From Heterodontus francisci (taxonomy: Eukaryota), in assembly GCF_036365525.1 (NCBI RefSeq), contig NC_090399.1, positions 53,414,430-53,478,429 of the forward strand: 64,000 nucleotides of DNA, written 5' to 3'. Both the position numbers and the translations under genes were made by a program. This document shows positions 23,991 through 48,386 of the stretch, in pieces. The notes beneath the pieces are model-generated. The model was not told the DNA's origin, did no database searches, and saw only the letters and a list, made by a program, of their open reading frames with translations. Each line of letters opens with the position of its first letter. The stretch's first letter is position 1.

Positions 23991-24065
23991 ATGAGATTCA
24001 GTAAGGTAATAAAGAGACTTTTTCCATTAACAATCAATTTTTGATTTTCTGTTGACTGTTGACAG

Positions 24066-24341: not shown

Positions 24342-24458
24342 GTATTTATTTCAGTTTTTACCCCATGTTCTGATCTAACATCACTGATCTATGAATCCAT
24401 TATCCTGTTCCATTCAGTGTCTGTGTATTGTTTGTGTTTTTATCCTTTCCCATTACAG

Positions 24459-24737: not shown

Positions 24738-24949
24738 GTAAGGAACTGCCCTGGATGTGTGTGAGAGGAGAGACAGAGAATGAGAGAGAGAGTGGGTGTG
24801 AGCGAGAGGGGAGAATGAATGAGATATAGATTGTAATGGACAGGAGAAACTGAGACTGTGGCAAGGAAACAGATTCAAAAAAAGAAAGGAAGAGTGAAAC
24901 TGGGGAAATTAAAATGAAAGACATCACCAAGCAAGCCATATATTGTACA

Positions 24950-27211: not shown

Positions 27212-30200
27212 GGGATGGGGAATGGGCTGGTCAGACCCGAGATACTGGGACTGGGGGGTGGGGATGGGCTGGTCAGACCTGAGACACAGTGACTGGGGGA
27301 TGGGGGAAGGGCTGGTCAGACCTGAGACACAGTGACTGGGGGGTGGGGATGGGCTGGTCAGACCTGAGACACAGTGACTGGGGGATGGGGGAAGGGCTGG
27401 TCAGACCTCAGACACAGTGACTGGGGGATGGGGGAAGGGCTGGTCAGACCTGAGACACAGTGACTGGGGGATGGGGAATGGGCTGGTCAGACCCGAGATA
27501 CTGGGACTGGGGGATGGGGATGGGCTGGTCAGACCTGAGACACAGTGACTGGGGGATGGGAGATGAGCTGGTCAGACCTGAGGCACAGTGACTGCGGGAT
27601 GGGGGAAGGGCTGGTCAGACCTGAGACACAGTGACTGGGGGATGGGGAATGGGCTGGTCAGACCCGAGATACAGGGACTGGGGGATGGGGATGGGCTGGT
27701 CAGACCTGAGACACAGTGACTGGGGGATGGGAGATGAGCTGGTCAGACCTGAGACACAGTGACTGGGGGATGGGGGAAGGGCTGGTCAGACCTGAGACAC
27801 AGTGAGTGGGGGATGGGGAATGGGCTGGTCAGACCTGAGACACAGTAACTGGGCAGTGGGGAATGGGGTGGTCAGAACTGAGACACTGGGACTGGGGGAT
27901 GGGGAATGGGCTGGTCAGACCCGAGATACTGGGACTTGGGGATGGGGAATGGGCTGGTCAGACCCGAGATACTGGGACTTTGGGATGGGGAATGGGCTGG
28001 TCAGACCTGAGACACTGGGACTGGGGGATGGGGAATGAGCTGGTCAGACCCGAGATACTGGGACTGGGGGGTGGGGATGGGCTGGTCAGACCAGAGACAC
28101 TGGGACTGGGGGATGGGGATGGGCAGGTCAGACCTGAAACACAGTGACTGGGGGATGGGGAATGGGCTGGTCAGACCCGAGATACTGGGACTGGGGGATG
28201 GGGGATGGGCTGGTCAGACCCGAGACACTGGGACTGGGGGATGGGGAATGGGCTGGTCAGACCCGAGATACTGGGACTGGGGGATGGGGATGGGCTGGTC
28301 AGACCTGAGACACTGAGACTGGGGGATGGGCTGGACAGATCTGAGACACAGGCACTGGGGGATAGGGCATGGGCTGGTCAGACGCGAGACACAGTGACTG
28401 GGGGATGGGGAATGGGCTGGTCAGACCTGAGACACTGGGACTGGGGGATAGGGAATGGGCTGGTCAGACCTGAGACACTGGGACTGGGGGATGAGGGATG
28501 GGGGATGGGCTGGTCAGACCTGAGACACTGGGACTGGAGGATGGGGGATGGGCAGGTCAGGCCTGAGACGCAGTGACTGGGGGATGGGGAATGGGCTGGT
28601 CAGACCTGAGACAGTGGGACTGGGGGATGGGGAATCGGCTGGTCAGACCTGAGACACTGGGACTGGGGGATGGGGGATGACTGGTCAGACCTGAGACACT
28701 GGGACTGGGGGATGGGCTGGTCAGACCTGAGACACTGGGACTGCGGGGATGGGGGAATCGGCTGTTCAGACCGGAGACACTGGGACTGCGGGGATGGGGG
28801 ATGGGCTGGTCAGACCCGAGACACTGGGACTGGGAGATGGGGGATGAGCTGGTCAGACCTGAGACACTGGGACTGCGGGGATGGGGAATGGGCTGGTTAG
28901 ACCCGAGACAGTGGGACTGGGAGATGGGGGATGAGCTGGTCAGACATGAGACACTGGGACTGGGGGATGGGGGTTGGTCTGTTCAGACCTGAGACACTGG
29001 GACTGTGGGGATGGGGAATGGGCTGGTCAGACCCGAGACAGTGGGACTGGGAGATGGGGGATGAGCTGGTCAGACATGAGACACTGGGACTGGGGGATGG
29101 GGGTTGGGCTGGTCAGACCTGAGGCACTGGGACTGGGAGATGGGGAATGGGCTGGTCAGACCCGAGACAGTGGGACTGGGAGATGGGGGATGAGCTGGTC
29201 AGACATGAGACACTGGGACTGGGGGATGGGGGTTGGGCTGGTCAGACATGAGACACTGGGACTGCCGGGATGGGGGATGGGCTGGTCAGACCTGAGACAC
29301 TGGGAATGGGGGATGGTCTGGTCAGACCCGAGACACTGGGACTGGGGGATGGGGGATGGACTGCTCAGACTCGAGACACTGGGACTGGGGGATGGGCTGG
29401 TCAGACCCGAGGCACTGGGACTGGGAGATGGGGGATGGGCTGGTCAGACCCGGGAAAATGGGAGTGGGGGGATGGGCTGGTCAGACTCGAGACACTGGGA
29501 CTGGGGGATGGGGGATGGTCTGGTCAGACCCGAGACACTGGGACTGGGGGATGGGCTGGTCAGACTCGAGACACTGGGACTGGGGGATGGGCTGGTCAGA
29601 CCCGAGGCACTGGCACTGGGAGACGGGGGATGGGCTGGTCAGACCTGAGATGCTGGGAATGGGGGTTGGGCTGGACAGACCCGAGATACTGGGACTGGGG
29701 GATGGGGAATGGGCTGGTCAGACCCGAGAAACTGGGACTGGGGGATGGGGATGGGCTGCTCAGACCTGAGACACTGAGACTGGGGGATGGGGGATGGGCT
29801 GGTCAGACCTGAGACACTGGGACTGGGGGATGGGGGATGGGCTGGTCAGACGCGAGACACAGTGACTGGGGGATGGGGAATGGGCTGGTCAGACCCGAGA
29901 TACTGGGACTGGGGGATGAGGGATGGGGGATGGGCTGGTCAGACCTGAGACACTGGGACAGGGGGATGGGGAATGGGCTGGTCAGACCTGAGACACTGGG
30001 ACTGGGGGATGAGGGATGGGGGATGGGCTGGTCAGACCTGAGACACTGGGACTGGAGGATGGGGGATGGGCAGGTCAGGCCTGAGACGCATTGACTGGGG
30101 GATGGCGAATGGGCTGGTCAGACCTGAGACACTGGGAGTGGGGGATGGGGGATGGTCTGGTCAGACACGAGTAACTGGGTCTGGGGGATGGGGGATGGGC

Positions 30201-33200
30201 TGGTCAGACCTGAGACACTGGGACTGCGGGGATGGGGGAATCGGCTGTTCAGACCTCAGACACTGGGACTGCGGGGATGGGGGATGGGCTGGTCAGACCT
30301 GAGACACTGGGGGATGGGGGTTGGTCTGGTCAGACCTGAGACACTGGGACTGCGGGGATGGGGAATGGGCTGGTCAGACCCGAGACACTGGGACTGGGAG
30401 ATGGGGGATGAGCTGGTCAGACATGAGACACTGGGACTGGGGGATGGGGGTTGGGCTGGTCAGACCTGAGGCACTGGGACTGGGAGATGGGGGATGTTCT
30501 GGTCAGACCTGAGACACTGGGACTGCAGGGATGGGGGATGGGCTGGTCAGACCTGAGACACTGGGATTGCGGGGATGGGGGATGGGCTGGTCAGACCTGA
30601 GACGCTGGCACTGCGGGGATGGGGGATGGGCTGGCCAGACCTGAGACACTGGGGATGGGGGATGGTCTGGTCAGACCCGAGACACTGGGACTGGGGGATG
30701 GGGGATGGGCTGGTCAGACTCGAGACATTGGGACTGGGGGATGGGCTGGTCAGACCCGAGGCACTGGGACTGGGAGATGGGGGATGGGCTGGTCAGACCC
30801 GAGACAATGGGACTGGGGGGGTGGGCTGGTCAGACTCAAGACACTGGGACTGGGGGATTGGGGTTGGTCTGGTCAGACCCGAGACACTAGGACTGGGGGA
30901 TGGGGGATGGTCTGGTCAGACCCGAGACACTGGGACTGGGGGATGAGGGATGGGCTGGTCAGATCCGAGATACTGGGACTGGGGGATGGGGATGGGCTGG
31001 TCAGACCTGAGACACTTGGACTGGGGGATGGGGAATGGGCTGGTCAGACCCGAGATACTGGGACTGGGGGATGGGGGATGGGCTGCTCAGACCTGAGACA
31101 CTGGGACTGGGGGATGGTGGAAGGTCTGGTCAGACCTGAGACACTGGGACTGGGGGATGGGGGAAGGTCTGGTTAGACCTGAGACACTGGAACTGGGGGA
31201 TGGGGATGGGCTGGTCAGACCTGAGACACTGGGACTGGGGGATGGGGGAATCGGCTGGTCAGACCTGAGACACTGGGACTGCAGGGATGGGGGATGGGCT
31301 GGTCAGACCTGAGACACTGGGGGATGGGGGATGGGCTGGTCAGACCTGAGGCACTGGGACTGGGAGATGGGGGATGTTCTGGTCAGACCTGAGACACTGG
31401 GACTGCGGGGATGGTCTGGTCAGACCCGAGACACTGGGACTGGGGGATGGGGGATGGGCTGGTCAGACTCGAGACACTGGGACTGGGGCTATCGGCTGGT
31501 CAGACCCGAGGCACTGGGACTGGGGGGATGGTCTGGTCAGACCCGAGACACTGGGACTGGGGGGATGGGCTGGTCAGACTCGAGACACTGGGACTGGGGG
31601 ATGGGCTGGTCAGACCCGAGGCACTGGGACTGGGAGATGGGGGATGGGCTGGTCAGACCTGAGATGCTGGGAATGGGAGATGGGCTGGTCAGACCTGAGA
31701 TACTGGGACTGGGGGGGTGGGGATGGGCTGGTCACACCTGAGACACTGGGACTGGGGGATGGGGAATGGGCTGGTCAGACCCGAGATACTGGGACTGGGG
31801 GATGGGGATGGGCTGCTCAGACCTGAGACACTGGAACTGGGGAATGGGGGATGGGCTGGTCAGACCTGAGACACTGGGACTGGGGGATGGGGGAAGGTCT
31901 GGTCAGACCTGAGACACTGGGACTGGGGGATGGGGATGGGCTGGTCAGACCTGAAACACAGTGACTGGGGGATGGGGAATGGGCTGGTCAGACCCGAGAT
32001 ACTGGGACTGGGGGATGGGGGATGGGCTGGTCAGACCTGAGACACTGGGACTGGGGGATGGGGATGGGCTGGTCAGACCTGAGACACTGGGACTGGGGGA
32101 TGGGGGATGGGCTGCTCAGACCTGAGACACTGGGACTGGGGGATGGGGGAAGGTCTGGTCAGACCTGAGACACTGGGACTGGGGGATGGGGGAAGGTCTG
32201 GTTAGACCTGAGACACTGGAACTGGGGGATGGGGATGGGCTGGTCAGACCTGAGACACTGGGACTGGGGGATGGGGGAATCAGCTGGTCAGACCTGAGAC
32301 ACTGGGACTGCAGGGATGGGGGATGGGCTGGTCAGACCTGAGACACTGGGGGATGGGGGATGGGCTGGTCAGACCTGTGGCACTGGGACTGGGAGATGGG
32401 GGATGTTCTGGTCAGACCTGAGACACTGGGACTGCGGGGATGGTCTGGTCAGACCCGAGACACTGGGACTGGGGGATGGGGGATGGGCTGGTCAGACTCA
32501 AGACACTGGGACTGGGGGATAGGCTGGTCAGACCCGAGGCACTGGGACTGGGAGATGGGGGATGGGCTGGTCAGACCAGAGACACTGGGACTGGGGGGAT
32601 GGGCTGGTCAGACTCGAGACACTGGGACTGGGGGATGGGGGATGGTCTGGTCAGACCCGAGACACTGGAACTGGGGGATGGGGGATGGGCTGGTCAGACT
32701 CGAGACTGGGACTGGGGGATGGGCTGGTCAGACCCGAGGCACTGGGACTGGGAGATGGGGGATGGGCTGGTCAGACCTGAGATGCTGGGAATGGGGGATG
32801 GGCTGGTCAGACCTGAGATACTGGGACTGGGGGGGTGGTGATGGGCTGGTCACACCCGAGATACTGGGACTGGGGGATGGGGATGGGCTGCTCAGACCTG
32901 AGACACTGGAACTGGGGAATGGGGGATGGGCTGGTCAGACCTGAGACACTGGGACTGGGGGATGGGGGAAGGTCTGGTCAGACCTGAGACACTGGGACTG
33001 GGGGATGGGGATGGGCTGGTCAGACCTGAAACACAGTGACTGGGGGATGGGGAATGGGCTGGTCAGACCCGAGATACTGGGACTTGGGGATGGGGGATGG
33101 GCTGGTCAGACCTGAGACACTGGGACTGGAGGATGGGGATGGGCTGGTCAGACCTGAGACACTGGGACTGGGGGATGGGGAATGGGCTGGTCAGACCTGA

Positions 33201-34183
33201 GACACTGGGACTGGGGGATGGGGGATGGGCTGGTCAGACCCGAGACACAGTGACTGGGGGATGGGGAATGGGCTGGTCAGACCTGAGACACTGGGACTGG
33301 GGGATGGGGAATGGGCTGGTCAGACCTGAGACACTGGGACTGGGGAATGGGGGATGGGCTGGTCAGACCTGAGACACTGGGACTGGAGGATGGGGGATGG
33401 GCTGGTCAGGCCTGAGACGCAGTGACTGGGGGATGGGTATGGGCTGGTCAGACCTGAGACTGGGACTGGGGGATGGGGAATCGGCTGGTCAGACCTGAGA
33501 CACTGGGAGTGGGGGATGGGCTGGTCAGACACGATTAACTGGGACTGGGGGATGGGGGATGGGCTGGTCAGACCCGAGACACTGGGACTTGGGGATGGGG
33601 GAATCGGCTGGTCAGACCTGAGACACTGGGACTGCGGGGATGGGGGATGGGCTGGTCAGACCTGAGACACTGGGGGATGGGCTGGTCAGACCCGAGACAC
33701 TAGGACTGGGGGATGGGGGATGGGCTGGTCAGACCCTAGACACTGGGACTGTTGGATGGGAGATGGGCTGGTCAGACCTGAGACAGTGGGGCTGGGGGAT
33801 GGGGGTATCGGCTGGTCAGACCTGAGACACTGGGACTGCGGGGATGGGGGAATCGGCTGGTCAGACCTGAGACACTGGGGGATGGGGGATGGTCTGGTCA
33901 GACCTGAGACACAGTGACTGGGGGATGGGGGATGGTCTGGTCAGACCCGAGTCACACTGGGACTGGGGGATGGGGGATGGGCTGGTCAGACCCGAGGAAC
34001 TGGGACTGGGGGGATGGGGGATGGGCTGGTCAGACTCGAGACACTGGGACTGGGGGATGGTCTGGTCAGACCCGAGACACTGGGACTGGGGGGATGGGGG
34101 ATGGGCTGGTCAGACCCGAGACACCAGGACTGGGGTATGGGGGATGGGCTGGTCAGACCCGAGACACTGGGACTGGGGGATGG
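27212..34183. repeat. G-rich ~37-43 bp minisatellite, ~7 kb, in intron 4 of the class I gene
   Basis: Unit GGGCTGGTCAGACCTGAGACACTGGGACTGGGGGATGGGGGAT, roughly 160 copies. Confidence 0.97.
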
Positions 34184-34729
34184 GTGAAATTAACATCCTG
34201 AGAAAAGATTGTCGAAACATCCCAATAATTCTATGCATTAAATTCAGTCAGGAGGTAGTCATGTTCATGACACATGCAATGAGTGTGACAGAACTGAGTG
34301 ATAAATACAAGTATGTGTGTACAATGAATATTTAAGAAAGATCTCTAAGATAAAAGTAACAGATTTCCAGTCTGTTACACTTACATTGAGGGAATTTGAA
34401 GCAATCTTGTTCAGAGCAAATATTTTGCAGCTGATTAATGCTCATCGACACTTTATTTCCCACAATCACTAAACAGAGAATGTCAATCATTTAAAAGATG
34501 CAGAGAGACTCCCAACAATAGAAATAACTTCACAAACAGAAAAGAGAAGCCAGACCTTTCTTCCTGGTTTCTGACCTAAAGCCCCCAGAGCTAACAATCT
34601 ATTCAGTTTCAAGCTAATTCCAATCTCAGAATTCTCTGAATGTGCAGCAATGAGTCTGTGTTTACTTAATAACCATTAGATTTTGTGGCTTAAGTGGACA
34701 CAGCTGCACATGAGCAGAGCAATTCGCAA

Positions 34730-35910
34730 GGAAAGACTTACATTTTCATAGCGTCTTTCACTAACTCAGAACATCCGAAAGCTCTTTACAGCTTTTTGAA
34801 GTGTAGTTACTGCTGCAATATAGGAAATGCATCAGAATATTTACACACTGCAACCTCCCACAAACAGTAATTTAATAGTGACTAGAAAATATTTTGGTCA
34901 GGACAGCAGGGAGAACTTCCCTGCCCTTCTTCGAAATAGTGCCATGGGATATTTAAATCCATCTGAGAGGGCAGACTGGGGCGTATTTTAATGTCTCATA
35001 GAACGATGGCAACTGTTAGTGCAGCACTCCCTCAGTACTGACCCTCTGACAAGACTGCACTCCCTCAGTAATGCCCCCTCCAACAGCGCAGCACTGCCTC
35101 AAAAATGACCCTCCAACAGTGCAGCACTGCCTCAGTACCGACCCTCTGACAAGACTGCACTCCCTCAGTAATGCCCCCTCCAACAGCGCAGCACTGCCTC
35201 AGTACTGGCCCTCTTCCGACAGTGCAGCAATGCCTCAGTACTGGCCCTCTTCCGACAGTGCAGCACTGCCTCAGTACTGGCCCTCTTCCGACAGCGCAGC
35301 ACTGCCTCAGTACTGGCCCTCTTCCGACAGCGCAGCACTGCCTCAGTACTGGCCCTCTTCCGACAGCGCAGCACTGCCTCAGTACTGGCCCTCTTCCGAC
35401 AGCGCAGCACTGCCTCAGTACTGGCCCTCTTCCGACAGCGCAGCACTGCCTCAGTACTGGCCCTCTTCCGACAGCGCAGCACTGCCTCAGTACTGGCCCT
35501 CCGACAGTACGGCACTCCCTCAGTACTGGTCCTCCGACAGTACGGCACTCCCTCAGTACTGGCCCTCTTCCGACAGTGCAGCACTGCCTCAGTACTGGCC
35601 CTCTTCCGACAGCGCAGCACTGCCTCAGTACTGGCCCTCTTCCGACAGCGCAGCACTGCCTCAGTACTGGCCCTCTTCCGACAGCGCAGCACTGCCTCAG
35701 TACTGGCCCTCTTCCGACAGCGCAGCACTGCCTCAGTACTGGCCCTCTTCCGACAGCGCAGCACTGCCTCAGTACTGGCCCTCTTCCGACAGCGCAGCAC
35801 TGCCTCAGTACTGGCCCTCCGACAGTACGGCACTCCCTCAGTACTGGTCCTCCGACAGTGCGGCACTCCCTCAATACTGCAATGGAGTGTCAGCCTAGCT
35901 TTTGTGCTCA
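34730..35910 (-). mobile_element. Deu-domain SINE (SacSINE/AmnSINE-like) containing an internally amplified minisatellite
   Basis: CCCTGCCCTTCTTCGAAATAGTGCCATGGGAT..CAGCACTCCCTCAGTACTG on the left and GGAGTGTCAGCCTAG on the right of the array. Confidence 0.6.
35020..35880. repeat. 36/33 bp minisatellite
   Basis: GCACTGCCTCAGTACTGGCCCTCTTCCGACAGCGCA tandem, about 24 copies, many identical. Confidence 0.95.
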
Positions 35911-36201
35911 GAAGTCTAATTGTGCTCAGTTTTCCCTGTCCACAACGTCTCTCTTGACCCCTCCACTACCTGTGTGTTGCTAGTCCGAGATCCAGGGTGG
36001 AATTTTTACTTGCTGCTCGGGTGTGAATCTTGTCCTCGTAACAATGGAAATCAGGTATTTTCTACGAGCAGACGTGTGAGATTCAGCAGTGAGGCTGTTT
36101 CCTGGGCTGTACAATGTCATCTCGGAGATTGAACAAAGACAACACACAGACAGACAGGCTGGGAATAGAGAGACAATCCTGACATTTTAAATATGTTTCA
36201 G

Positions 36202-36321
36202 AAATGCCAGAAAACAGTGGGGGACAATTCCTGCTTGGAATTATAACTGGATCAGTGATCGCTGCACCGGCTGTTATATTGGGAATAATCGGAATAGTCA
36301 TCTGGAAAAGGCAACAGAGAG
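36202..36321 (+). CDS. MHC class I heavy chain exon 5 (connecting peptide + transmembrane + stop-transfer)
   Basis: Acceptor tgtttcag|, donor G|GTAAGA, 120 nt, phase 1. Translation EMPENSGGQFLLGIITGSVIAAPAVILGIIGIVIWKRQQR. Confidence 0.88.
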
Positions 36322-36329
36322 GTAAGAAA

Positions 36330-37450
36330 CAGAGAGAGAGGAATGTGGAATGGAAGGGACAGAGTGAGTGTGAAGGAATCTCCAGTACTGGGAGTACAGG
36401 ACACTGAGAGGGGAGAGTGAGAGACAGGGAGTGTGGAACTGAGGGGACAGAGTGAGTGTGAGGGAATCTCCAGTACTGGGAGTACAGGACCCTGAGAGGG
36501 GAGAGTGAGAGAGAGGGAATGTAGAACTGAGGGGACAGAGAGAGAGTGAGGGAATCTCCAGTACTGGGAGTACAGGACATTGAGGGCGAGAGTGAGAGAG
36601 AGGGAATGTAGAACTGAGGGGACAGAGTGAGTGTGAGGGAATCTCCAGTACTGGGAGTACAGGACCCTGAGAGGGGAGAGTGAGAGAGAGGGAATGTAGA
36701 ACTGAGGGGACAGAGTGAGTGTGAGGGAATCTCCAGTAGTGGGAGTACAGGACCCTGAGAGGGGAGAGTGAGAGACAGGGAATGTGGAACTGAGGGGACA
36801 GAGTGAGTGTGAGGGAATCTCCAGTAGTGGGAGTACAGGACCCTGAGAGGGGAGAGTGAGAGAGAGGGAATGTAGAACTGAGGGGACAGAGTGAGTGTGA
36901 GGGAATCTCCAGTACTGGGAGTACAGGACCCTGAGAGGGGAGAGGGAGAGAGAGGGAATGTAGAACTGAGGGGACAGAATGAGTGTGAGGGAATCTCCAG
37001 TACTGGGAGTACAGGACCCTGAGAGGGGAGAGGGAGAGAGAGGGAATGTAGAACTGAGGGGACAGAATGAGTGTGAGGGAATCTCCAGTACTGGGAGTAC
37101 AGTACATTGAGGGGGAGAGTGAGAGAGGGAATGTAGAACTGAGGGGACAGAGTGAGTGTGAGGGAATCTCCAGTACTGGGAGTACATGACACATAGAGGG
37201 GAGAGTGAGAGAGGGGAATGTGGAACTGAGGGGACAGAGTGAGTGTGAGGGAATCTCCAGTAGTGGGAGTACAAGACACTGAGAGGGGAGAGTGAGGGAG
37301 AGGGGAATGTGGAACTGAGGGAACAGAGTGAGTGTGAGGGAATCTCCAGTCGTGGGAGTACAAGACACTGAGAGGGGAGAGTGAGAGAGAGGGGACAGAG
37401 TGAGTGTGGAGAAATCTCCAATACTCAGCATTGAGAGGAGAGAGTGAGGG
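36330..37450. repeat. Purine-rich ~90 bp minisatellite after the TM exon
   Basis: GGAATGTAGAACTGAGGGGACAGAGTGAGTGTGAGGGAATCTCCAGTACTGGGAGTACAGGACCCTGAGAGGGGAGAGTGAGAGAGAG repeated about 12 times. Confidence 0.92.
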
Positions 37451-37469
37451 ACTGGGGTATTTTATAGGA

Positions 37470-39600
37470 TTAAATGGAATTTATAGAAAACACAGGCCAT
37501 TCGACCCAACAGCTTTGTCCTGGTGTTTCTGTCCCACATGGGCCTCCTCCCATCATACTGTATCTAACCCTATCAGCACATCCTGTTATTTCTTTCTCCC
37601 TCATCTATTTATCTAGCTTCTCCCTAATGCATCTATCAAATCACCTCCACTACTCCCTGTGGTAGTGAGTTCCACAGTCTGCATAAAGAAGTTTCTTCTG
37701 AATTCCTTATTGAATTTATTCATGACTGTTTTATCTTCAAGGCCTCTAGTTTTGGACAACCCACAAGTGGCAACATCCTCTACACATCTACCCTATTGGA
37801 TATCGAGATCAAAACTGTTCACTTGACTCTGTGGTCCAACCAAGAGTCTTTCTTAGTTTAATATAACTTCTCTATTTTCAGTTCTATTCCTGTGGAAATG
37901 AACCCCAGTCGTTTATATATTGCAAAAAAATCAGTCATTCCAGCATTGACGCTTGGGGAACATCACTGTCGACCATCCTCCAGTCTGAAACAACCATTTA
38001 CTACAACTCACTCTTGTCTGTACTTAAGCCAGTTTTTTTTATCCAATTGGACACTGACCCTCCTATTCCATGAACCTCAATTTTGCTAACCACTCTTTTA
38101 TGTGTTACCTCATCAAATGCTTTTTAAAAATCCACATAAACAACAACCACTGTATTCCCTTCATCAACTTTCTCTATTACTTCATCAAAACATTCAGTTG
38201 AATTAGTTGAGCATGATCTGCCTTTTATAAATCCATGCTGCCTATCCTGAACTAACTCAAATCTCTTTAAGTGCTTGTTGATATTTCCCCTGATTATTGT
38301 TTCGAAAACCTTACCCACCAATGATATTAAATATTTAGTACCTCCCCCCCCTTCCATTACCATACCCATTTCCTCTCCCCTTTCTGCTTCTACTGATATT
38401 TTGTCAGATTCCTCTTCCTTAGTGAACATTGATACAAAGTACTCAAAGTGTATTAACCTTGCCCTGCATCTCTCAGCATATATCAGTCTTTTTGTCCCTA
38501 ATAGGCCTCACTCCTCCTCTTCCGACCCATTTACTATTTACATGCTGATAGAAAATCTTTGGGTTCCCTTTTATGTTGATTGCCATTCTATTTTTGTGCT
38601 CTCTCTTTGCTGTTCTTATTTTCCTCTTCACTTCCCCTCTCAACCTATTGTATATGGCCTGGTTCTCACTTGAAGAATTTTCCTGACATGCATCTTACAC
38701 CCTCTTCTTTTATTTGCATCATAATCTCTATCTCCCTCATCATCCAAGGAGCCCTGTTTTTGGTTCCCTTACCTTTTGCATTTGTTGGAATGTTCCTAGC
38801 CTGTACTTGAAACATCTCTTCCTTAAAGATAACCCATTGTTCCGATACAGCTTTTCCTGCTTTGATACAATTTTATCCTTCTCATCGCATTAAAATTAGT
38901 CCTCTTCTAATCTAGACATTCTCCCTTATTTTGTTCCTTGCTTTTCTGCATTACTAGTCTAGACCTTATGATACAATGATCACTCTTACCCAAGTTTTCC
39001 CCCACAGACACTTGATCCATGTGGCCCACCTCATTTCCCACATCAGATCCAGTAATGTCTCCTTTCTAGTTGGGATGAGAACATACTGATCTAGGAAGTT
39101 CTCCTGAAAATATTTCAAAAATTCCACCCCCTCTTTACCCTTTACTCTAAAATTATCCCAATTGATATTTGGGTAATTAAAGTCCCCCAATATCACCACT
39201 CTATAGTTCTTGTGCATCTCTGTAATTTCCCTGCAGATTTGCTCCTCTATCTCTCTCCCACTATTTGGAGGTCTATAGAATTCCCCGAGTAACATGATCA
39301 AACTCCTTTTGCTCCTCAACTCTAACCAAATGGATTCTGTCCTTGCCCCTTCGAGGACGTCCTCCCTTTCCAACACGACAATGTCTGCCCTGATCAGTAC
39401 TGGCACCTTCCCTCCCTTTTTTTCTTTCTCTATCTTTTCTGAACATTTTATATCCTTGTACATAAAGCACCACGTCCTCACCATTTTTAAGCCACGTTTC
39501 CGTTATTGTCACTACATCATATTCCCAGACTGCTATTTGTGCTTGTAGCTCACCAACCTTATTCACCACACTTTGTGTATTTCAACATGCATTGTAATCC
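37470..39600 (-). mobile_element. Decayed, internally deleted CR1 LINE (EN + RT pieces)
   Basis: YDVVTITETWL, YRPPN, LGDFNYPNINW and QHGFIKGRSC on the minus strand. Confidence 0.85.
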
Positions 39601-39814
39601 TGTCTTTGCATTCCTCATAGACCTTCTCAGTCCACTGCCATCTTAGTAATCATGGTCTTGGTACTCAGTTATATTGTTTCAGTTCTACCTACATCTCGGC
39701 CTCTGAAATTCTGCTAATCTGCTAATCTTTCAGTTCTGACACAGAAGTCTGCCTCTTTTTGATCTCTGCTGGATTTCTACTGAATTTTACCCTCTGACCA
39801 TTTGGTTCCTTTTA

Positions 39815-40012
39815 ATAAAAGCAAAATACTGCGGATGCTGGAAATCTGAAACAAAAACAAGAAATGCTGGAATCACTCAGCAGGTCTGGCAGCATCTGTG
39901 GAAAGAGAAGCAGAGTTAACGTTTCGGGTCAGTGACCCGAAACGTTAACTCTGCTTCTCTTTCCACAGATGCTGCCAGACCTGCTGAGTGATTCCAGCAT
40001 TTCTTGTTTTTG
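39815..40012. mobile_element. Palindromic Penelope-terminus insertion (perfect 80-bp arms) with a 15-bp flanking direct repeat
   Basis: 39852-39931 is the exact reverse complement of 39933-40012. TTTGGTTCCTTTTAA occurs at 39801-39815 and 40009-40023. Confidence 0.85.
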
Positions 40013-40408
40013 GTTCCTTTTAAACCTTTCAGGCCAATGAAAGATTTGATCAACGAAGGTCCAAACCACAGTTTCCCATCAGGTCACCTCTCAGTTGCTT
40101 TTACCCAGGATGTATCACAAGTAGGGTTAAAAATAGAGTTCAGTATAAGATTCTCCAGAGCTGCCATATCTCAGTGTGTAACATGTAGTTAAAAAGGATT
40201 CACATTGAAAACTCCTTACTGTCTTCCTTAGAAACAGATAAAGCAGGAAACCCACAGCAACTATTCCACATGAATGCTGGGAAAGGACTTCAAACCAGTG
40301 TCCATGTTTTACAAAATTCTGTTTAAATTACTGGCCCTTTAATGTCTACAGTTACTCTTTTCTCAAATATCATGTAGTTTACATGTTTAGTATTTTCATT
40401 TGTTTCAG

Positions 40409-40740
40409 CACAACTATTTCTGAAGATCGATCCCACTCTCCATCACCCGGAAACCATGGATAATGAAGTGGAACTGGAGTCGACTGAATCCGACCCACAG
40501 ATCAAAACGGAGCCTTTTCAGAGAGGGTCACATGTCAGAACAAGTCCACATGACCCAGTGGACGGTAACAAAACCACAACTGTACAAGAACAGAGTTCAG
40601 TCCAAACAGACACTGCAATTCCTGCAAACAATGTTTCTGATGTAAAACGTAATCCAGACAATGATATTGTAGAATTCTTAACAGACTATGAGGAACGAGA
40701 AACAACACAGAGTTTACTGAGACACTGCGATCCACATTGA
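40409..40740 (+). CDS. Candidate class I cytoplasmic-tail exon (110 aa, acidic, Ser/Thr-rich)
   Basis: Strong acceptor tattttcatttgtttcag|. The phase-1 join is in frame with the 40456-40740 ORF: AQLFLKIDPTLHHPETMDNEVELESTESD..ETTQSLLRHCDPH*. An internal phase-1 donor G|GTAACA is possible at 40564/40565. Confidence 0.6.
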
Positions 40741-42308
40741 AAAAAGCCCTGGACATAATCCATCAACAGATGACCAGCTGGACTCAAGAGTTTGGAGGAC
40801 CGGGCAGTGACTGAAAGGACATGGGAATTGAAATAGATGAGAATGACAAGCTGTGTTCACAAGACAAAGCAAGGCCTGCAAACATTTATAATGAGATTAA
40901 AAGAGAGGCCATTAGCCAATACAAATTGGAAAATATATCTTTTCAGGATTTCAAACGGAGTCATGCAAAACATCGGGAGGGAAACTCATTGACAAAAAAA
41001 CTGGGATTGGAGATTGTGCAGCATGAGGCACCACTGCAAAGATGGGAAATTCTTATCCCAGAAAAACTTCCAAGTGGCTCTGATGCTCCATTTGAAAGAG
41101 ACAGACAGTTCTGATGAATATTACCGATATATAAAACACAGCTTGTCATTTGAAAAAGATTGGCTGAAGGAACAAGTTATACAACACTGTGCAGCCACAC
41201 ATGATAAACAAGTTCCTCTGCTGTGCTCTCTCGCACTGGATATTCTGCAGGGGATTATCAGTCGGGTGAGGGAAGCTCTCAAGGATATAACACCTCCAGA
41301 TAATGAGAATTCAGTGGTCGGTTTTATTCAGGCAGTTAAAGAGAAACTGGGTGATGAGATACAGATTCCAAAGGAGACATTGGGAACTGTTACTTTTCAG
41401 TCTGAAAAGATTAACCCACAGAACTTTAAACAAGAAATTGAAAGGTTTATCAGTACAAAGGATTTGACTAAAAGTGTTGAAGATTGGGGGAAGGATATTG
41501 CTGGGAAAATCACTGCTCTCCCCACCAGTCCATCCAGTGAATTGAACACAATGTTATGTGGCTGTGGGGAGCAGTGTCCTTTCTGTGGAGTCCTGTACAA
41601 ACAGGGGGCACTCACAGCACAGTGCTGAATATCACCAGAGCAGAGGACTGATTGGATACAGAAACATTAATACTGAGAAACTAATATCAGAGAATTGTTC
41701 AATGGATTTCATGAGTGATGTGAGTTTCGGAATAAAGATACCGACTGGAAATCGTTTCTTTTCAAGAGCTCCAGAACTGTCAATAACCAATACTGTCACT
41801 GGAATATTCCCACCAATATTCCCTGGGCAACACAGTGGCGCAGTGGTTAGCACCGCAGCCACACAGCTCCAGCGACCCAGGTTTGTTTCTGGATACTGCT
41901 TGTGTGGAGTTTGCAAGTTCTCACTGTGACCACGTTGGTTTTCTCCCACAGCCAAAGACTTGCAGGCTAATAGGTAAATTGGCCATTGTAAATTCCCCTA
42001 GTGCTTGTAGGTGGTAGGGGAATTGAGAAGGTGTGGTAGGAATATGGGATTAATGTAGGATTAATAGAAATGGGTGGTTGATGGTCGGCATAGAGTCAGT
42101 GGGCCGAAGGGCCTGTTTCAGTGCTGTATCTCTAAATAAATACCAGCATTAAAACATTGTCTTTTAGAAATGGGTTTACAACAATTACGAAATACATTTC
42201 GCTGATAAATACTCGGTGAACCCAATAGACGGCATTGCCGTTTGGAATATACCCTGGAATAAGATTGAAAAAGACATTGAAGATAAATACAGTTGTGTAG
42301 ATTCATGA
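40740..42308 (+). pseudogene. GVIN1: C-terminal fragment of interferon-induced very large GTPase (GVIN1/VLIG, URGCP family), frameshifted and SINE-interrupted
   Basis: LTKKLGLEIV, YYRYIKHSLSFEKDWL, LCGCGEQCPFCG, HSAEYHQSRGLIGYR..KLISENCS, and after the SINE KWVYNNY..FADKY..WNIPW..* (stop 42306-42308). These match the GVIN C-terminal GCxxQCPFC / HSxxxHRPxG / WKW motifs. At least three frameshifts; no P-loop seen. The 5' boundary is uncertain (clear homology from ~40975). Confidence 0.8.
41825..42141 (+). mobile_element. tRNA-derived SINE (HE1/V-SINE-like) with a CR1-type 3' tail
   Basis: A-box TGGCGCAGTGG, central TGTGTGGAGTTTGCAAGTTCTC, tail GGGCCGAAGGGCCTGTTTCAGTGCTGTATCTC(TAAA)n. Confidence 0.85.
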
Positions 42309-42361
42309 TATGAAAGCAGAAAACGCTGGAAATACTCAGCAGGTCTGACTGCCTCTGTGGA

Positions 42362-43372
42362 GAGTTAATATTTCAAGTCAATGGCCCTTCATCACAAAGT
42401 TAATATTTCAGGTCAATGGCCCTGCATCACAAAGTTAATATTTCAGGTCAATGGCCCTGCATCACTGAGTTAACATTTCAGGTCAATGGTCCATCATCAA
42501 TGAGTGAACATTTCAGGTCAATGGCCCTGCATCAATGAGTTAACATTTCAGGTCAATGGTCCATCATCAATGAGTGAACATTTCAGGTCAATGGTCCTTC
42601 ATCAATGAGTTAACATTTCAGGTCAATGGTCCATCATCAATGAGTGAACATTTCAGTTCAATGGTCCTTCATCAATGAGTTAACATTTCAGGTCAATGGT
42701 CCATCATCAATGAGTTAACATTTCAGGTCAATGGTCCATCATCAATGAGTTAACATTTCAGGTCAATGGTCCATCATCAATGAGTTAACATTTCAGGTCA
42801 ATGGTCCATCATCACTGAGTTAACATTTCAGGTCAATGGTCCTTCATCAATGAGTTAACATTTCAGGTCAATGGTCCTTCATCACTGAGTTAACATTTCA
42901 GGTCAATGGTCCATCATCAATGAGTTAACATTTCAGTTCAATGGTCCTTCATCAATGAGTTAACATTTCAGGTCAATGGTCCATCATCAATGAGTTAACA
43001 TTTCAGGTCAATGGTCCATCATCAATGAGTTAACATTTCAGGTCAATGGTCCATCATCACTGAGTTAACATTTCAGGTCAATGGTCCTTCATCAATGAGT
43101 TAACATTTCAGGTCAATGGTCCTTCATCACTGAGTTAACATTTCAGGTCAATGGTCCATCATCAATGAGTTAACATTTCAGGTCAATGGTCCTTCATCAC
43201 TGAGTTAACATTTCAGGTCAATGGTCCATCATCACTGAGTTAACATTTCAGGTCAATGGTCCTTCATCAATGAGTTAACATTTCAGGTCAATGGTCCTTC
43301 ATCACTGAGTTAACATTTCAGGTCAATGGTCCATCATCACTGAGTTAGTATTTCAGGTCAATGGCCCGTCAA
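42362..43372 (-). repeat. 35-bp tandem array (~29 copies) of a degenerate hammerhead-ribozyme core from a Penelope-derived repeat
   Basis: Unit GAGTTAACATTTCAGGTCAATGGTCC(A/T)TCATCA(A/C)T, flanked by oppositely oriented Penelope-terminus repeats at 42315-42362 and 43375-43468. Confidence 0.85.
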
Positions 43373-44029
43373 TAGTTCTGTTTCTCCCTGAGTATGACCT
43401 GCTGAGTATTTCCTACATTTTCTGTTTTTATTTCAGATTTCCAGCATCCACAGTATTTGCTTTTGTATTCGTGAAGATTATTGATTTCACTTAACTTATT
43501 AGTTTTAAAAACGTAACCAGAGAAGCTCCCTCCCTCCCTCCCTCCATCCCTCCTCCTCCCACTCCAAGTATCTGCCTCCAGTGCTCAGTGAACCTGAACG
43601 TCCTCGTCTTCACTCCAAGCTCCTACCTGCTGATGTCCAGACTGGTATTTCTCAGCTTGAAGCATGGGGCAGGCTCCATCAGGATCTCTGTTTAACATCT
43701 ACAGCTCACTTACCAGAACCTCAGAATCACTGAGGCCTCTTCACCATCTGAAGTCACAATCAACTCCATATGGGTGGGAAATTCCTCGGAGTCGCTCCTG
43801 CTGTCTCACTGTCACTCTGCTGGAAATCCTGTCCTTCTGGCTAGCTTGTAGTATGGGATTGGGAGTGGCTCTGAGGAATTTTCCAGCCTATTTAATAGAT
43901 TTGAAGGAGTTTCTCTGACAGTGACCTTTCTACTGAAATGTGCTCCCACTGTTTAGCAGGTGGTGAAAGTTAATTTGCTTCACTGGTTCCCTCGTATAAA
44001 GAGTTAATCAGAAAGAATAAAATGGGAAA

Positions 44030-46500: not shown

Positions 46501-46739
46501 ATTCTGATCTTGTATGGTGAGCAGCCCCTGGACTTGGAACATTGGAAGAATATATATATCCTATCGGACAGCAGTTTAGACATTTAAATGTGAAGCAAAT
46601 TCATTAAGAAAGACAACTTACATTACAGATTTTCTTCCAGAAAACACGATTCACAGATTTCCCTTATTTTAAAAAGGAATTTGATTATTACTAAAAGGTG
46701 CTGAATTATTTAATATATATAAAGGGAAGATGAAAGAGG

Positions 46740-48386
46740 ACGGTGTGAAACAGACTGGTAAGCTCGAGGAAGTGCTCGTTAGGAGGGAAGATGTGTTGGG
46801 GTTTTTGAATAACTTGAAGATAGACAAGTCTCCCGGGCCTGACGGGGTATATCCAAGGATGTTATGGGAAGCAAGGGATGAAATTGCAGAGCCGCTGGCA
46901 ATGATCTTTTCATCTTCTCTGTTGACGGGGGTGGTACCAGGTGATTGGAGGGTGGCAAATGTTGTGCCCCTGTTCAAGAAAGGGAATAGGAACAACCCTG
47001 GGAATTACAGGCCAGTTAGTCTTACTTCGGTGGTAGGCAAGTTGATGGAAAAGGTGCTGAGGGATAGGATTTCTGAGCATCTGGAAAGACACTGCTTGAT
47101 TCGGGACAGTCAGCACGGTTTTGTGAGGGGTAGGTCTTGCCTCACAAGCCTGATTGAATTCTTTGAGCAGGTGACCAAGCAAGTGGATGAGGGTAAACCA
47201 GTGGATGTGGTGTACATGGATTTTAGTAAGGCATTTGATAAGGTCCCCCATGGTAGACTTATGGAGAAAGTCAGGAGGCATGGGATAGTGGGGAATGTGG
47301 CCAGTTGGATTAAGAATTGGCTAACTGATAGAAGGCAGAGAGTGGTCTTAGATGGTAAATACTCAGCCTGGAGCCCAGTTACCAGTGGCGTGCCACAGGG
47401 ATCAGTTCTGGGTCCTCTCCTGTTTGTGATTTTTATTAACGACTTGGATGAGGAAGTCGAAGGGTGGGTCAGTAAATTTGCAGATGATACAAAGGTTGGT
47501 GGAGTTGTGGATACCGAGGAGGGCTATTGTCGTCTGCAAAGGGACTTGGATAGGTTGCAGTGCTGGGCTGAAAAGTGGCAGATGGAGTTTAACCCTGAAA
47601 AGTGTGAGGTCGTCCATTTTGGAAGGACAAACACGAATGCAAAATACTGGGTTAACGGTAGGGTTCTTGGGCATGTGGAGGAGCAGAGAGACCTTGGGGT
47701 CTATGTGCATAGATCGTTGAAAGTTGCAACTCAAGTGGATAGGGCTGTGAAGAAGGCATATGGGGTGTTAGCGTTCATTAGCAGAGGGATTGAATTTAAG
47801 AGCCGTGAGGTGATGATGCAGCTGTACAGGACCTTGGTAAGGCCTCATTTGGAGTACTGTGTGCAGTTCTGGTCGCCTCATTTTAGGAAGGATGTGGAAG
47901 CCTTGGAGAGGGTGCAGAGGAGATTTACCAGGATGTTGCCTGGAATGGAGAATAAGTCTTACGAGGAAAGGCTGAACATTCTAGGCCTCTTCTCATTAGA
48001 ACGGAGAAGGATGAGGGGTGACATGATAGAGGTTTATAAGATGATCAGGGGAATAGATAGGGTAGACAGTCAGAAACTTTTTCCCCGGGTGGAGCAAAGC
48101 GTTACAAGGGGTCATAAATTTAAGGTGAAGGGTGGGAGATATAAGGGGGATGTCAGGGGAAGGTTCTTTACCCAGAGAGTGGTCGGGGCATGGAATGCCT
48201 TGCCTGGGGAAGTTGTTGAGTCAGAAACTTTAGGGACTTTCAAACGGCTTTTAGATAGGTATATGGATAAAGGAGAATGATGGGGTATAGATTAAATTGT
48301 CCTTGACAGAGGACAAAGGATCGGCACAACATCGTGGGCCGAAGGGCCTGTTCTGTGCTGTATTTTTCTATGTTCTATGTTCTATG
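46740..48386 (+). mobile_element. Young 5'-truncated CR1 LINE with an uninterrupted RT ORF
   Basis: 516-aa ORF with [30 protein letters not shown] and KFADDTK; (TTCTATG)n tail. Confidence 0.96.

What the first reader, a model, noticed from the sequence alone, without database searches (positions are those of the whole stretch)
40409..42308. Class I cytoplasmic exon runs straight into a very-large-GTPase (GVIN1/URGCP) C-terminal remnant: possible MHC-I/GVIN chimera
Seen: the TM exon donor (phase 1) joins in frame to a strong acceptor at 40409, giving a 110-aa tail. With no intervening transposon, same-strand sequence after the stop continues as ~1.2 kb of GVIN-like C-terminal coding remnant (KLGLEIV, GCGEQCPFC, HSAEYH..GLIGY, KWVY..FADKY). 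It is broken by frameshifts and a SINE, and no GTPase P-loop is seen. Known: GVIN1 is an interferon-induced, largely single-exon giant ORF, and class I tails are normally short. Inference: either a GVIN fragment was captured as the tail/3'UTR exon of this ISRE-driven class I gene, or this is a decayed copy of a family of receptors with an MHC-I ectodomain and a cytosolic GVIN C-terminal Cys/His-rich domain. I am not aware of that architecture being described.
Basis: partly seen in the sequence, partly recalled or inferred. Interest (0 to 1): 0.82.

Follow-up and report, generated by a model that had tools for sequence, protein, structure and literature searches.

The report
Shark MHC class I–GVIN conjoined gene
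A shark non-classical MHC class I gene really does splice its membrane-anchor exon, in frame, onto a decayed copy of a giant interferon-induced GTPase (GVIN1-like) gene, which now supplies only a 110-residue tail and the 3' untranslated region; in another shark order the same pairing is annotated as one unbroken 1,932-residue class I–membrane anchor–GTPase protein, an architecture I could not find described.

Summary
Transcript contigs from three runs and two coded organisms join the TM exon donor (36321) to the acceptor at 40409 (GT..AG). They then run unbroken through the GVIN-like sequence to at least 41872, while unique intron bins have zero depth.

The exon is not just a C-terminal remnant. 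It is a whole GVIN1-like coding exon with two large internal deletions, several frameshifts and a SINE. The ATG at 40456 is the native GVIN start. The class I "tail" is therefore 15 residues of GVIN leader, 77 native GVIN N-terminal codons (96% identical to horn shark XP_067865890.1) and 17 out-of-frame codons up to the TGA at 40738. Most of the URGCP domain, the GTPase domain and the middle region are deleted. The Cys/His-rich C-terminus is untranslated 3'UTR.

The pairing is not a one-off. Epaulette shark XP_060706692.1 (1,932 aa, a predicted model) has the same class I lineage (alpha2 74%, alpha3 85% identical), a TM segment and an intact full-length GVIN in one frame.

This window therefore most likely holds a decayed paralogue of an older class I→GVIN conjoined unit. 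Whether the full fusion protein is made is not shown. No such architecture appeared in the papers searched.

The parts
36202..36321 (+). Transmembrane exon of the non-classical MHC class I gene (…GIITGSVIAAPAVILGIIGIVIWKRQQR). It enters and leaves in phase 1; the donor is AG|GTAAGA.
   Evidence: Sequence. The alpha3 donor is in phase 1. Contigs cover 36201-36319 and join to 40407/40409.
36322..40408 (+). Intron of 4,087 nt removed from transcripts. It holds an 88-nt satellite (36331-37393), LINE fragments on the minus strand (about 38124-39569) and a highly repeated element (about 39814-39990).
   Evidence: GT..AG joint in X1, X2 and X16, with depth 0 at 40150-40349 in all four runs. TRF. ORFs.
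40409..40455 (+). Leader of the GVIN coding exon, read in the class I frame as (A)QLFLKIDPTLHHPET. It is homologous to the stretch before the GVIN Met in P0093 and P0106.
40456..40686 (+). Native GVIN start codon and first 77 codons (an acidic N-terminal leader). They are translated as the bulk of the class I cytoplasmic tail.
   Evidence: 74/77 identical to P0093 residues 74-150. Met1 of P0095 aligns to 40456.
40671..40690 (+). Deletion junction 1. P0093 residues 151-459, most of the URGCP domain, are missing. The frame shifts from frame 3 to frame 2.
   Evidence: tblastn alignments overlap here. Contig X5 record 28 of a paralogue stops matching the window at 40682.
40687..40740 (+). 17 out-of-frame codons (YEERETTQSLLRHCDPH) and the TGA stop that ends the class I ORF.
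40692..41022 (+). Remnant of the end of the GVIN URGCP domain and the linker (P0093 465-572). It is in frame 2 with an internal stop at 40812-40814, and is untranslated.
   Evidence: HMM E 1.7e-6. 56-75% identity to shark GVINs.
41010..41022 (+). Deletion junction 2. P0093 residues about 573-1399 are missing, which covers nearly all of the VLIG-type GTPase domain (Pfam 561-963) and the middle region.
41023..41592 (+). GVIN C-terminal region, part 1 (P0093 1400-1589), in frame 3, ending in CGCGEQCPFCG. 85-87% identical to horn shark GVINs.
   Evidence: phmmer E 1e-49, HMM E 4e-48.
41593..41594 (+). Site of an 8-nt deletion relative to organism B transcripts, which carry TGTATGAT here. By my own reading, inserting those 8 nt restores CPFCGVLYDCTNRGHSQHSAEYH.
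   Evidence: table 4. Compare P0093 CPFCGVLCDCTNREHSQHSAEYH.
41594..41718 (+). GVIN C-terminal region, part 2 (His-rich HSQHSAEYH…GLIGY), in frame 1.
   Evidence: HMM E 3.5e-8. 89% identical to P0094 1463-1499.
41719..41826 (+). GVIN C-terminal region, part 3, back in frame 3 (FRNKDTDWK…HWNIP).
41831..42140 (+). SINE with a tRNA-like head, inserted into the remnant. It carries AATAAA at 42135.
   Evidence: Depth of 150,000-380,000 and loose ends at 41823-41830 and 42136-42142. Sequence. Poly(A) motifs.
42168..42308 (+). Last 46 GVIN codons (KWVYNNYEIHFADKY…DIEDKYSCVDS) and the native stop, in frame 2.
   Evidence: HMM E 7e-9. 57-61% identical to P0094/P0095.

Best explanation
This is a conjoined gene. 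A non-classical MHC class I gene (alpha1 about 8447-8700, alpha2 24066-24341, alpha3 24459-24737, TM 36202-36321) has no cytoplasmic exon of its own that these data show. It splices its phase-1 TM donor to the acceptor of the large coding exon of a same-strand GVIN1-like gene 4.1 kb downstream.

The 47-nt GVIN leader is open in that phase and in frame with GVIN's own ATG (40456). Translation therefore runs into 77 native GVIN N-terminal codons. At the first of two large internal deletions (about 40686) the frame slips, and it ends 17 codons later at TGA 40738.

The rest of the GVIN copy is untranslated 3'UTR. It comprises the URGCP-domain end and the Cys/His-rich C-terminal ~320 codons, broken by frameshifts and a SINE. 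Nearly all of the GTPase domain is gone.

The pairing of this class I lineage with a GVIN of this subfamily is older than this locus. In the epaulette shark the same junction is annotated with an intact, full-length GVIN in frame. The copy here is best read as a paralogue that kept the class I half and let the GTPase half decay.

Shown: the splice, the transcription through the remnant, the homologies, the deletions and the stop. Inferred: that 40409 descends from the native GVIN acceptor, that the arrangement is ancestral, and that the tail is under some constraint. Its function is unknown; most likely it is a disordered acidic tail with no GTPase-related activity.
For: Splice and transcription:
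- A joint 36319->40407 (cut +2 = 36321->40409, GT..AG, skipping 4,087 nt) occurs in contigs of X1 (organism A) and of X2 and X16 (organism B).
- Contigs are continuous from 40407 to 41872 at even depth.
- Depth is 0 at 40150-40349 in all four runs.
- The same runs hold 30-52% of the sampled words of alpha2-alpha3.

Frame and class I identity: for the frame; Pfam MHC_I and C1-set on the exons.

GVIN identity: phmmer E 1e-49 against proteins carrying the URGCP and URGCP_GTPase domains and named interferon-induced very large GTPase 1-like, plus the profile hits.

The tail is the GVIN N-terminus: 74/77 identical to P0093, and P0095 Met1 aligns to 40456.

Deletions: mapped against Pfam coordinates of P0093, URGCP 230-530 and GTPase 561-963.

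Decay downstream of the stop:
- Organism B differs at 3 of 332 sites in the tail ORF against 33 of 943 sites downstream (Fisher p = 0.012).
- B's indel inside the ORF is 9 nt (in frame), while those downstream are 1 and 8 nt.

Shared arrangement: P0106 = XP_060706692.1 has MHC_I 7-126, C1-set 137-216, TM 232-250, URGCP 436-734 and GTPase 766-1168. It is 62/74/85% identical to this window's alpha1/alpha2/alpha3. Its junction …IWKRPWR|VSAQ… reads the very bases found at window 40400-40411.
Against: - All runs are Logan contigs whose RNA nature is only a guess on record. I infer RNA from the GT..AG joint and the empty introns. Contigs cannot show isoform proportions, strand or the 3' end.
- X5, from the same sample as X1, shows no joint.
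- Other class I isoforms, or a small native cytoplasmic exon, could exist and be missed.
- The full-length fusion is one automatic gene model. It lacks a signal peptide and the first half of alpha1, so it could be a read-through artefact.
- No other class I-GVIN protein was found among 87 phmmer hits, among 120 listed GVIN representatives, or in a search with P0106 residues 1-290.
- With only 3 substitutions in the tail ORF (1 synonymous, 2 not), constraint on the tail is weakly supported.
Confidence: 0.78

Rival explanations
1. Incidental read-through. The GVIN pseudogene merely lies downstream. The TM->40409 splice would be a minor by-product with no protein-level role, the real class I mRNA would end elsewhere, and the Hemiscyllium model would be an unrelated annotation merge of neighbouring genes.
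For: - Contigs cannot quantify isoforms, and X5 lacks the joint.
- P0106 lacks a leader and half of alpha1.
- No further fusion models were found.
- A 15-codon open leader in the right phase has a sizeable chance probability (about 1 in 6 by my own estimate).
Against: - The joint is on contigs in three runs from three studies and two organisms. Its depth (54 in X2) is comparable to that of the exon downstream, and no competing joint from 36321 is listed.
- The same class I lineage is paired with the same GVIN subfamily at the same junction bases in two shark orders.
- The stop lies in the last exon, so the mRNA is not an NMD target (inference).
Confidence: 0.15
2. Recent, lineage-specific exon capture. 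A fragment of a horn-shark GVIN paralogue (P0093/P0094-like) was duplicated next to this class I gene only in this lineage and was exonised. The epaulette-shark fusion would then have arisen independently.
For: - The remnant is much closer to horn shark GVINs (85-96% in intact blocks) than to the Hemiscyllium/Chiloscyllium ones (45-75%). This fits a young copy.
- Identity is uneven between blocks, suggesting conversion or mosaic origin.
Against: - Higher identity to same-species paralogues is also what orthology plus gene conversion predicts.
- Independent origin would require the same class I lineage, the same GVIN subfamily, the same orientation and the same acceptor region twice.
- Both deletions are already shared by organisms A and B.
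Confidence: 0.12
3. The GVIN C-terminal Cys/His-rich domain is still translated in this genome, through alternative splicing, frameshifting or an allele with fewer lesions, giving a class I receptor with that domain.
For: Organism B lacks one of the frameshifts: the 8 nt at 41593 are present there.
Against: - The window has a stop at 40738, at least five frame changes, an internal stop at 40812 and a SINE.
- B's contigs span both large deletions. Fourteen of X2 record 22's 15 differences over 40407-41090 are listed, and none falls between the 9-nt insertion behind 40641 and 40783, so the frame change and the stop are most probably kept.
- The 1-nt indel at 41000 is polymorphic within B.
- Substitution density downstream of the stop is 3.5 times higher than in the ORF.
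Confidence: 0.02

Closest known systems
GVIN1 / VLIG-1 and URGCP family (interferon-induced very large GTPases). Closest proteins: Heterodontus francisci XP_067865890.1 (P0093) and XP_067865191.1 (P0094).
   Same: The exon 40409-42308 is collinear with these proteins: the N-terminal leader (96% identity), the URGCP-domain end, and the C-terminal region with the CPFC…H..H motif (85-89% in intact blocks).
   Different: About 1,130 of about 1,650 codons are deleted, including most of the URGCP domain and nearly all of the GTPase domain. The rest is frameshifted and split by a SINE. Only the first 77 codons are translated, and as the tail of another protein. By my own knowledge, canonical GVIN/URGCP are soluble proteins without a membrane anchor.
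Hemiscyllium ocellatum XP_060706692.1 (P0106), annotated 'interferon-induced very large GTPase 1-like'.
   Same: Same class I lineage (alpha2 74%, alpha3 85% identical, and both lack the alpha2 cysteines). A TM exon ending …IWKR..R is joined in the same phase to the same GVIN leader and then to the GVIN Met.
   Different: There the GVIN part is intact (URGCP, GTPase, C-terminus; 1,932 aa in one frame). The acceptor lies 6 nt further upstream (VSAQ against AQ). It is a predicted model with no signal peptide, whereas this window's joint is seen in transcript contigs.
Non-classical (class Ib) MHC class I lineages of elasmobranchs: UBA, UEA, UDA, UFA and UGA, as listed in PMC12562908 and PMC10751288.
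   Same: Alpha1/alpha2 match Pfam MHC_I and alpha3 matches C1-set, with phase-1 exon structure and a TM exon. [quoted passage not shown]
   Different: The tail and 3'UTR come from a GVIN gene. The shark MHC map paper that could be read has no occurrence of GTPase, GVIN or URGCP. I did not assign the gene to a named lineage.
Conjoined or read-through fusion genes formed by intergenic splicing of neighbours (for example TWE-PRIL from TNFSF12-TNFSF13; my own knowledge).
   Same: Two same-strand neighbours are involved. The donor of an upstream gene's late exon joins the acceptor of the downstream gene's coding exon, in frame. The product has the membrane anchor of one gene and the body of the other.
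   Different: Here the downstream partner has decayed, so the 'fusion' adds only a short tail. The pairing is shared between two shark orders.
GVIN-family models with other N-terminal additions: CARD, PYRIN, FN3, Ig V-set + TM (Acipenser ruthenus P0177) and C2-set Ig (Mauremys mutica P0196).
   Same: They show that the GVIN body is repeatedly annotated behind different N-terminal modules. One of them has an Ig domain and a strong TM segment.
   Different: None carries an MHC class I ectodomain. All are unverified gene models, and I did not examine their loci.

Membership tests
GVIN1/URGCP very large GTPase family | VLIG-type (URGCP-like) GTPase domain, Pfam PF25683 | tested here: not met
   A GVIN profile and tblastn with 14 shark GVINs find almost none of it in the 64 kb. 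The homology stops about 12 residues into the Pfam span. P0093 residues about 573-1399 (GTPase domain 561-963) are deleted.
GVIN1/URGCP very large GTPase family | URGCP domain, Pfam PF25496 | tested here: not met
   Only its last ~65 residues remain (40692-40950, P0093 465-530), with an internal stop. Pfam reports no hit on the pieces.
GVIN1/URGCP very large GTPase family | Conserved C-terminal region with the CPFC / His-rich motif | tested here: met
   phmmer E 1e-49, profile E 4e-48, 3.5e-8 and 7e-9, and collinear with P0093 1400-1718. It is split over frames 3, 1, 3 and 2 and by a SINE.
GVIN1/URGCP very large GTPase family | One long intact ORF | tested here: not met
   There are two large deletions, at least five frame changes and stops. 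It is a pseudogenic derivative, not a functional member.
MHC class I (non-classical) | Alpha1/alpha2 MHC_I fold and alpha3 C1-set domain on separate phase-1 exons, followed by a TM exon | tested here: met
   PF00129 E 3e-8 and 8e-17; PF07654 E 1.5e-16. Splice phases read.
MHC class I (classical) | Conserved alpha2 disulfide (Cys101-Cys164) | tested here: not met
   The alpha2 exon translation contains no cysteine, and neither does alpha2 of P0106. This supports non-classical status.
Conjoined (intergenic-splice) fusion gene | A transcript joint from an exon of the upstream gene to a coding exon of the downstream same-strand gene, keeping the reading frame | tested here: met
   GT..AG joint 36321->40409 in X1, X2 and X16. 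The frame runs into the GVIN ATG at 40456.
Proposed MHC-I ectodomain + TM + full-length GVIN fusion receptor | All domains in one open frame | tested here: not met
   Not met in this window, where the ORF stops at 40738. Met only in the predicted protein P0106 of Hemiscyllium.
Proposed MHC-I ectodomain + TM + full-length GVIN fusion receptor | Occurrence in several species or loci as a protein or full-length transcript | tested here: inconclusive
   There is one model (P0106). P0093 of horn shark has a hydrophobic N-terminal extension joined at the same place. No further case was found among 87 + 120 representatives or with P0106 residues 1-290. However, clustering at 90% hides such isoforms, as it hid P0106 itself.

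The most novel reading that the evidence does not exclude
Galeomorph sharks possess a conserved type I membrane protein in which a non-classical, disulfide-less MHC class I ectodomain and TM anchor are fused to a complete cytosolic interferon-inducible very large GTPase (as in XP_060706692.1). After duplication in the horn shark lineage the two halves decayed in complementary copies. This window kept the class I half. XP_067865890.1 kept the GTPase behind a leader and TM-like exon.
Probability: 0.3. Interest if true: 0.88.

Novelty: new variant of a known kind. Interest (0 to 1): 0.66.

Why it matters
MHC class I molecules are known as short-tailed antigen-presenting or ligand molecules. Giant interferon-induced GTPases are poorly understood soluble effectors.

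A transcription unit that physically couples the two, found in two shark orders, points to one of two things:
- an unrecognised way of anchoring a GVIN-type GTPase to membranes behind a class I-like sensor; or
- a striking case of exon capture between two interferon-responsive immune genes.

It also gives a concrete, testable candidate, XP_060706692.1 and its locus. It further warns that "GVIN1-like" annotations can hide class I ectodomains inside 90% protein clusters.

For this window the practical result is a corrected gene model. The last exon is 40409 to at least 41872, the stop is at 40738, the tail is 110 residues of GVIN origin, and the 3'UTR is built from a dead GTPase gene.

Tried and rejected
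- **Pfam on the six translated pieces:** no hit. The local Pfam copy has no model for the GVIN C-terminus.
- **RNA and tRNA scans:** Rfam at gathering threshold on 39000-44000 gave nothing. ARAGORN on 39700-42400 found no tRNA, so the SINE head is not called as one.
- **SINE target-site duplication:** none of 6 nt or more.
- **Bacterial promoter/terminator scan:** irrelevant for a shark gene, disregarded.
- **Earlier findings:** word searches for GVIN, GTPase and cytoplasmic tail gave nothing relevant to this pairing.
- **Literature:** no paper links GVIN or very large GTPases with shark class I. The two Almeida et al. J Immunol papers on shark class Ib lineages are not held.
- **Search with P0106 residues 1-290:** no long protein with a similar ectodomain among cluster representatives.
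- **P0093's N-terminus:** I first read its hydrophobic N-terminus as a read-through translation of the T-rich intron upstream of the acceptor, because tblastn aligned it to 40336-40408. I now think a splice 6 nt upstream of 40409 is more likely. P0106 shares the same VSA codons directly after a bona fide class I TM exon. Identity to the window also drops abruptly from 96% to about 20% upstream of VSA. This remains unproven.
- Exons were searched one by one, so the annotated product of this very gene, about 450 aa, could not be looked up.
Full report
**1. What is in the sequence**

The window carries a class I gene on the + strand.
- The alpha1 and alpha2 ORFs match Pfam MHC_I, and alpha3 matches C1-set.
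- Alpha3 ends in phase 1 (…CAGTGGG|gtaagg).
- The TM exon 36202-36321 also ends in phase 1 at AG|GTAAGA.
- At 40407-40408 a polypyrimidine tract ends in AG.
- Joining 36321 to 40409 gives codon g|ca, an open frame 40411-40737 and TGA at 40738-40740.

**2. Is the downstream sequence GVIN-like?**

Yes.
- phmmer with the 211-residue open segment 40993-41625 against 1.84 billion representative proteins gave 87 hits. The best was E 1e-49, always near the C-terminus of proteins of 900-3,700 residues.
- The top hits carry the Pfam URGCP and URGCP_GTPase domains. Their sources name them interferon-induced very large GTPase 1-like.
- A profile built from 25 of them, searched against all inter-stop segments of the whole window, hit only collinear pieces on the + strand:
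  - 40815-41111, profile positions 524-588, E 1.7e-6;
  - 40993-41625, positions 1409-1597, E 4e-48;
  - 41546-41926, positions 1600-1646, E 3.5e-8;
  - 41719-41847, positions 1643-1672, weak;
  - 42168-42305, positions 1681-1723, E 7e-9.
- Nothing corresponds to profile positions 589-1408.

**3. The anatomy is a whole coding exon with holes**

A word search seeded with the first shark hit returned shark paralogues. tblastn of these against the window shows that horn shark (Heterodontus francisci) proteins are by far the closest.

Against P0093 (XP_067865890.1, 1,725 aa):

| P0093 residues | Window | Identity |
|---|---|---|
| 74-150 | 40456-40686 | 74/77 |
| 465-572 | 40692-41022 | 56-71% |
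| 1400-1589 | 41023-41592 | 85% |
| 1593-1629 | 41594-41718, frame 1 | 76% (89% to P0094) |
| 1637-1667 | 41719-41826 | 55% |
| 1677-1718 | 42168-42305 | 43% (57% to P0094) |

- Met1 of a Chiloscyllium paralogue (P0095) aligns to the ATG at 40456. That ATG is therefore the native GVIN start.
- The 47 nt before it are the GVIN leader.
- Pfam places the URGCP domain of P0093 at 230-530 and the GTPase domain at 561-963.
- The copy here has lost residues 151-459 and about 573-1399. That removes most of the URGCP domain, nearly all of the GTPase domain and the middle region.

The first deletion junction (about 40671-40690) shifts the frame. It is the reason the class I ORF stops 17 codons later.

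The SINE (about 41831-42140) is marked by depths of 10^5 and by loose ends in the read data.

The "110-aa class I tail" is therefore made of:
- 15 residues of GVIN leader;
- 77 residues of GVIN N-terminus in GVIN's own frame;
- 17 out-of-frame residues.

**4. Is the splice real?**

The look-up of sequencing runs with alpha2-alpha3 listed runs of coded organisms A and B holding 30-52% of the sampled words. I laid four of them on 36150-42149.

- The joint 36319->40407 is listed with GT..AG ends when the cut is moved +2, that is 36321->40409. It is carried by contigs in X1 (A) and in X2 and X16 (B), which come from three studies.
- Contigs then cover 40407-41090, 41061-41683 and 41654-41872 (X2). 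In X1 they cover 40434-40737 and 40708-41705, the latter with 1 mismatch in 998 nt. Depth is even along them.
- Unique intron bins are empty: 40150-40349 is 0 in all four runs.
- The runs are on record only as "RNA?". The canonical joint and the empty introns are my grounds for treating them as RNA.
- Contigs cannot give isoform shares, strand or the 3' end. Candidate poly(A) signals are at 41731, 42135 and 42148.

Conclusion: the acceptor is used, and the GVIN remnant is part of the same long terminal exon, as 3'UTR.

**5. Signs of what is and is not constrained**

Organism B's contigs span both deletion junctions, so the deletions are shared. They differ from the window as follows.
- 3 substitutions in the 332-nt tail ORF: one synonymous, plus H>Q and H>D.
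- 33 substitutions in 943 nt downstream (Fisher p = 0.012).
- B's indel within the ORF is 9 nt, which is in frame.
- Downstream, B has a 1-nt indel that is polymorphic between X2 and X16, and 8 extra nt behind 41593.
- By my reading, those 8 nt restore CPFCGVLYDCTNRGHSQHSAEYH. P0093 has CPFCGVLCDCTNREHSQHSAEYH.

This pattern fits a translated tail followed by a neutrally decaying remnant. The numbers are small.

**6. The pairing is not unique to this locus**

Listing the 90% cluster of P0095 revealed P0106 (XP_060706692.1, Hemiscyllium ocellatum, 1,932 aa, named interferon-induced very large GTPase 1-like).

- Its N-terminus aligns to this window's alpha1 (8579-8698) and alpha2+alpha3 (24062-24751). 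The rest aligns to the GVIN pieces.
- Pfam finds MHC_I 7-126, C1-set 137-216, URGCP 436-734 and URGCP_GTPase 766-1168.
- A single hydrophobic segment lies at 232-250.
- Exon by exon it is 62/74/85/46/50% identical to the window's alpha1/alpha2/alpha3/TM/tail. Both proteins lack the alpha2 cysteines.

The junctions line up:
- window: …IWKRQQR|A|QLFLKIDPTLHHPET-MDNEV;
- P0106: …IWKRPWR|VSAQPEPDHALHHQEA-MDTEV.

"VSAQ" is exactly what window bases 40400-40411 (gtt tca gca caa) encode. The other locus therefore uses an acceptor 6 nt upstream, where the window has TG instead of AG.

Horn shark P0093 itself begins with a leader-like and a hydrophobic segment joined at the same place: …LILIWLYLQSN|VSARLSQETDLTLHHPET-MDNEV. 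X5 contig record 26 is a 4.4% diverged paralogue transcript. It matches the window only from 40401 rightwards, and 28 nt of it lie elsewhere. Both facts are compatible with a splice there. They are not proof.

**7. Limits of the "family" claim**

- P0106 is one automatic model. It lacks a signal peptide and the first half of alpha1.
- None of the 87 phmmer hits matches the window's class I exons.
- A search with P0106 residues 1-290 found no long representative with such an ectodomain.
- None of the best 120 GVIN representatives carries PF00129 or PF07654.
- Fusion isoforms can hide inside 90% clusters, as P0106 did. These blanks are therefore weak evidence.
- The same list shows GVIN bodies annotated behind CARD, PYRIN, FN3, an Ig V-set domain with a strong TM segment (sturgeon P0177) and C2-set Ig domains (turtle P0196). 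N-terminal swapping in this family is common, at least in gene models.

**8. Literature**

- Searches combining GVIN or very large GTPase with shark or MHC class I returned nothing relevant.
- The open shark MHC map paper (PMC10751288) has no occurrence of GTPase, GVIN or URGCP.
- A 2025 review lists the shark class Ib lineages UBA, UEA, UDA, UFA and UGA without such a feature (PMC12562908).
- Two key lineage papers are not held. Absence from the literature is therefore not established.

**9. Species**

The best matches are Heterodontus francisci proteins. Notes of other agents on this genome call it horn shark. I take that as likely, not proven.

**10. Verdict**

- The capture of GVIN sequence as the tail and 3'UTR exon is shown.
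- In this genome no GVIN functional domain is translated.
- The locus is best read as a decayed paralogue of an older class I→GVIN conjoined unit, whose intact form is predicted in the epaulette shark.
- Whether a full class I-TM-GVIN protein exists is the open and interesting question. I give it about 0.3.

Noticed in passing
P0093 (XP_067865890.1/XP_067865891.1, Heterodontus francisci), residues 1-57: This intact horn shark GVIN1-like protein is annotated with a signal-peptide-like start (MDWKVFYSFLLLLSPTAAS) and a hydrophobic segment (…IFLPVILSITVGALLILIW…). Both are joined at the same VSA junction as the class I TM exon in P0106. It may be a membrane-anchored GVIN, or the complementary half of a duplicated class I-GVIN unit.
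   Followed up: partly
P0177 (Acipenser ruthenus, 2,616 aa), P0196 (Mauremys mutica), P0018/P0047/P0043 (teleosts), P0053: GVIN-family gene models carry other N-terminal modules: Ig V-set plus a strong TM segment (P0177, residues 152-170), C2-set Ig domains, FN3 and PYRIN. Some keep only the GVIN C-terminal region. These are unverified models, but they suggest recurrent domain shuffling onto GVIN.
   Followed up: partly
window 40401-40682 (read laying contigs X5 records 26, 28, 30): In the same sample, more abundant contigs 3.5-4.4% diverged from the window match only parts of the exon. They leave it at 40401 and at 40682, the deletion junction. They look like transcripts of an intact GVIN paralogue such as P0093.
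   Followed up: partly
Other contigs do continue to 41857/41872. It could be an alternative 3' end, a splice, or an assembly jump at a repeat. This is unexplained.
   Followed up: no
window 36268: A C/T difference in the TM exon. T is carried by the deeper contigs in all four runs, and C (as in the window) by the X1 contig that bears the joint. It is either an allele or a close paralogue of the TM exon.
   Followed up: no
window 36331-37393 and 35021-35879: The TM exon is flanked by tandem arrays. An 88-nt unit repeated 12 times starts 10 nt after the donor. A 36-nt unit repeated about 25 times lies upstream. A further large array fills 27800-34300 in the alpha3-TM intron.
   Followed up: no
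window 42362-43371: A 35-nt tandem array (29 copies, 94% matches) starts directly after the GVIN stop. Rfam at gathering threshold reports no family, hammerhead families included, in 39000-44000.
   Followed up: partly
P0104 (XP_067881252.1, Heterodontus francisci): The N-terminal ~130 and C-terminal ~45 residues of this GVIN1-like model match LINE reverse-transcriptase and endonuclease ORFs of the window (for example 46733-47032, 13374-13766, 12681-12824). The model seems to have absorbed transposon sequence.
   Followed up: no
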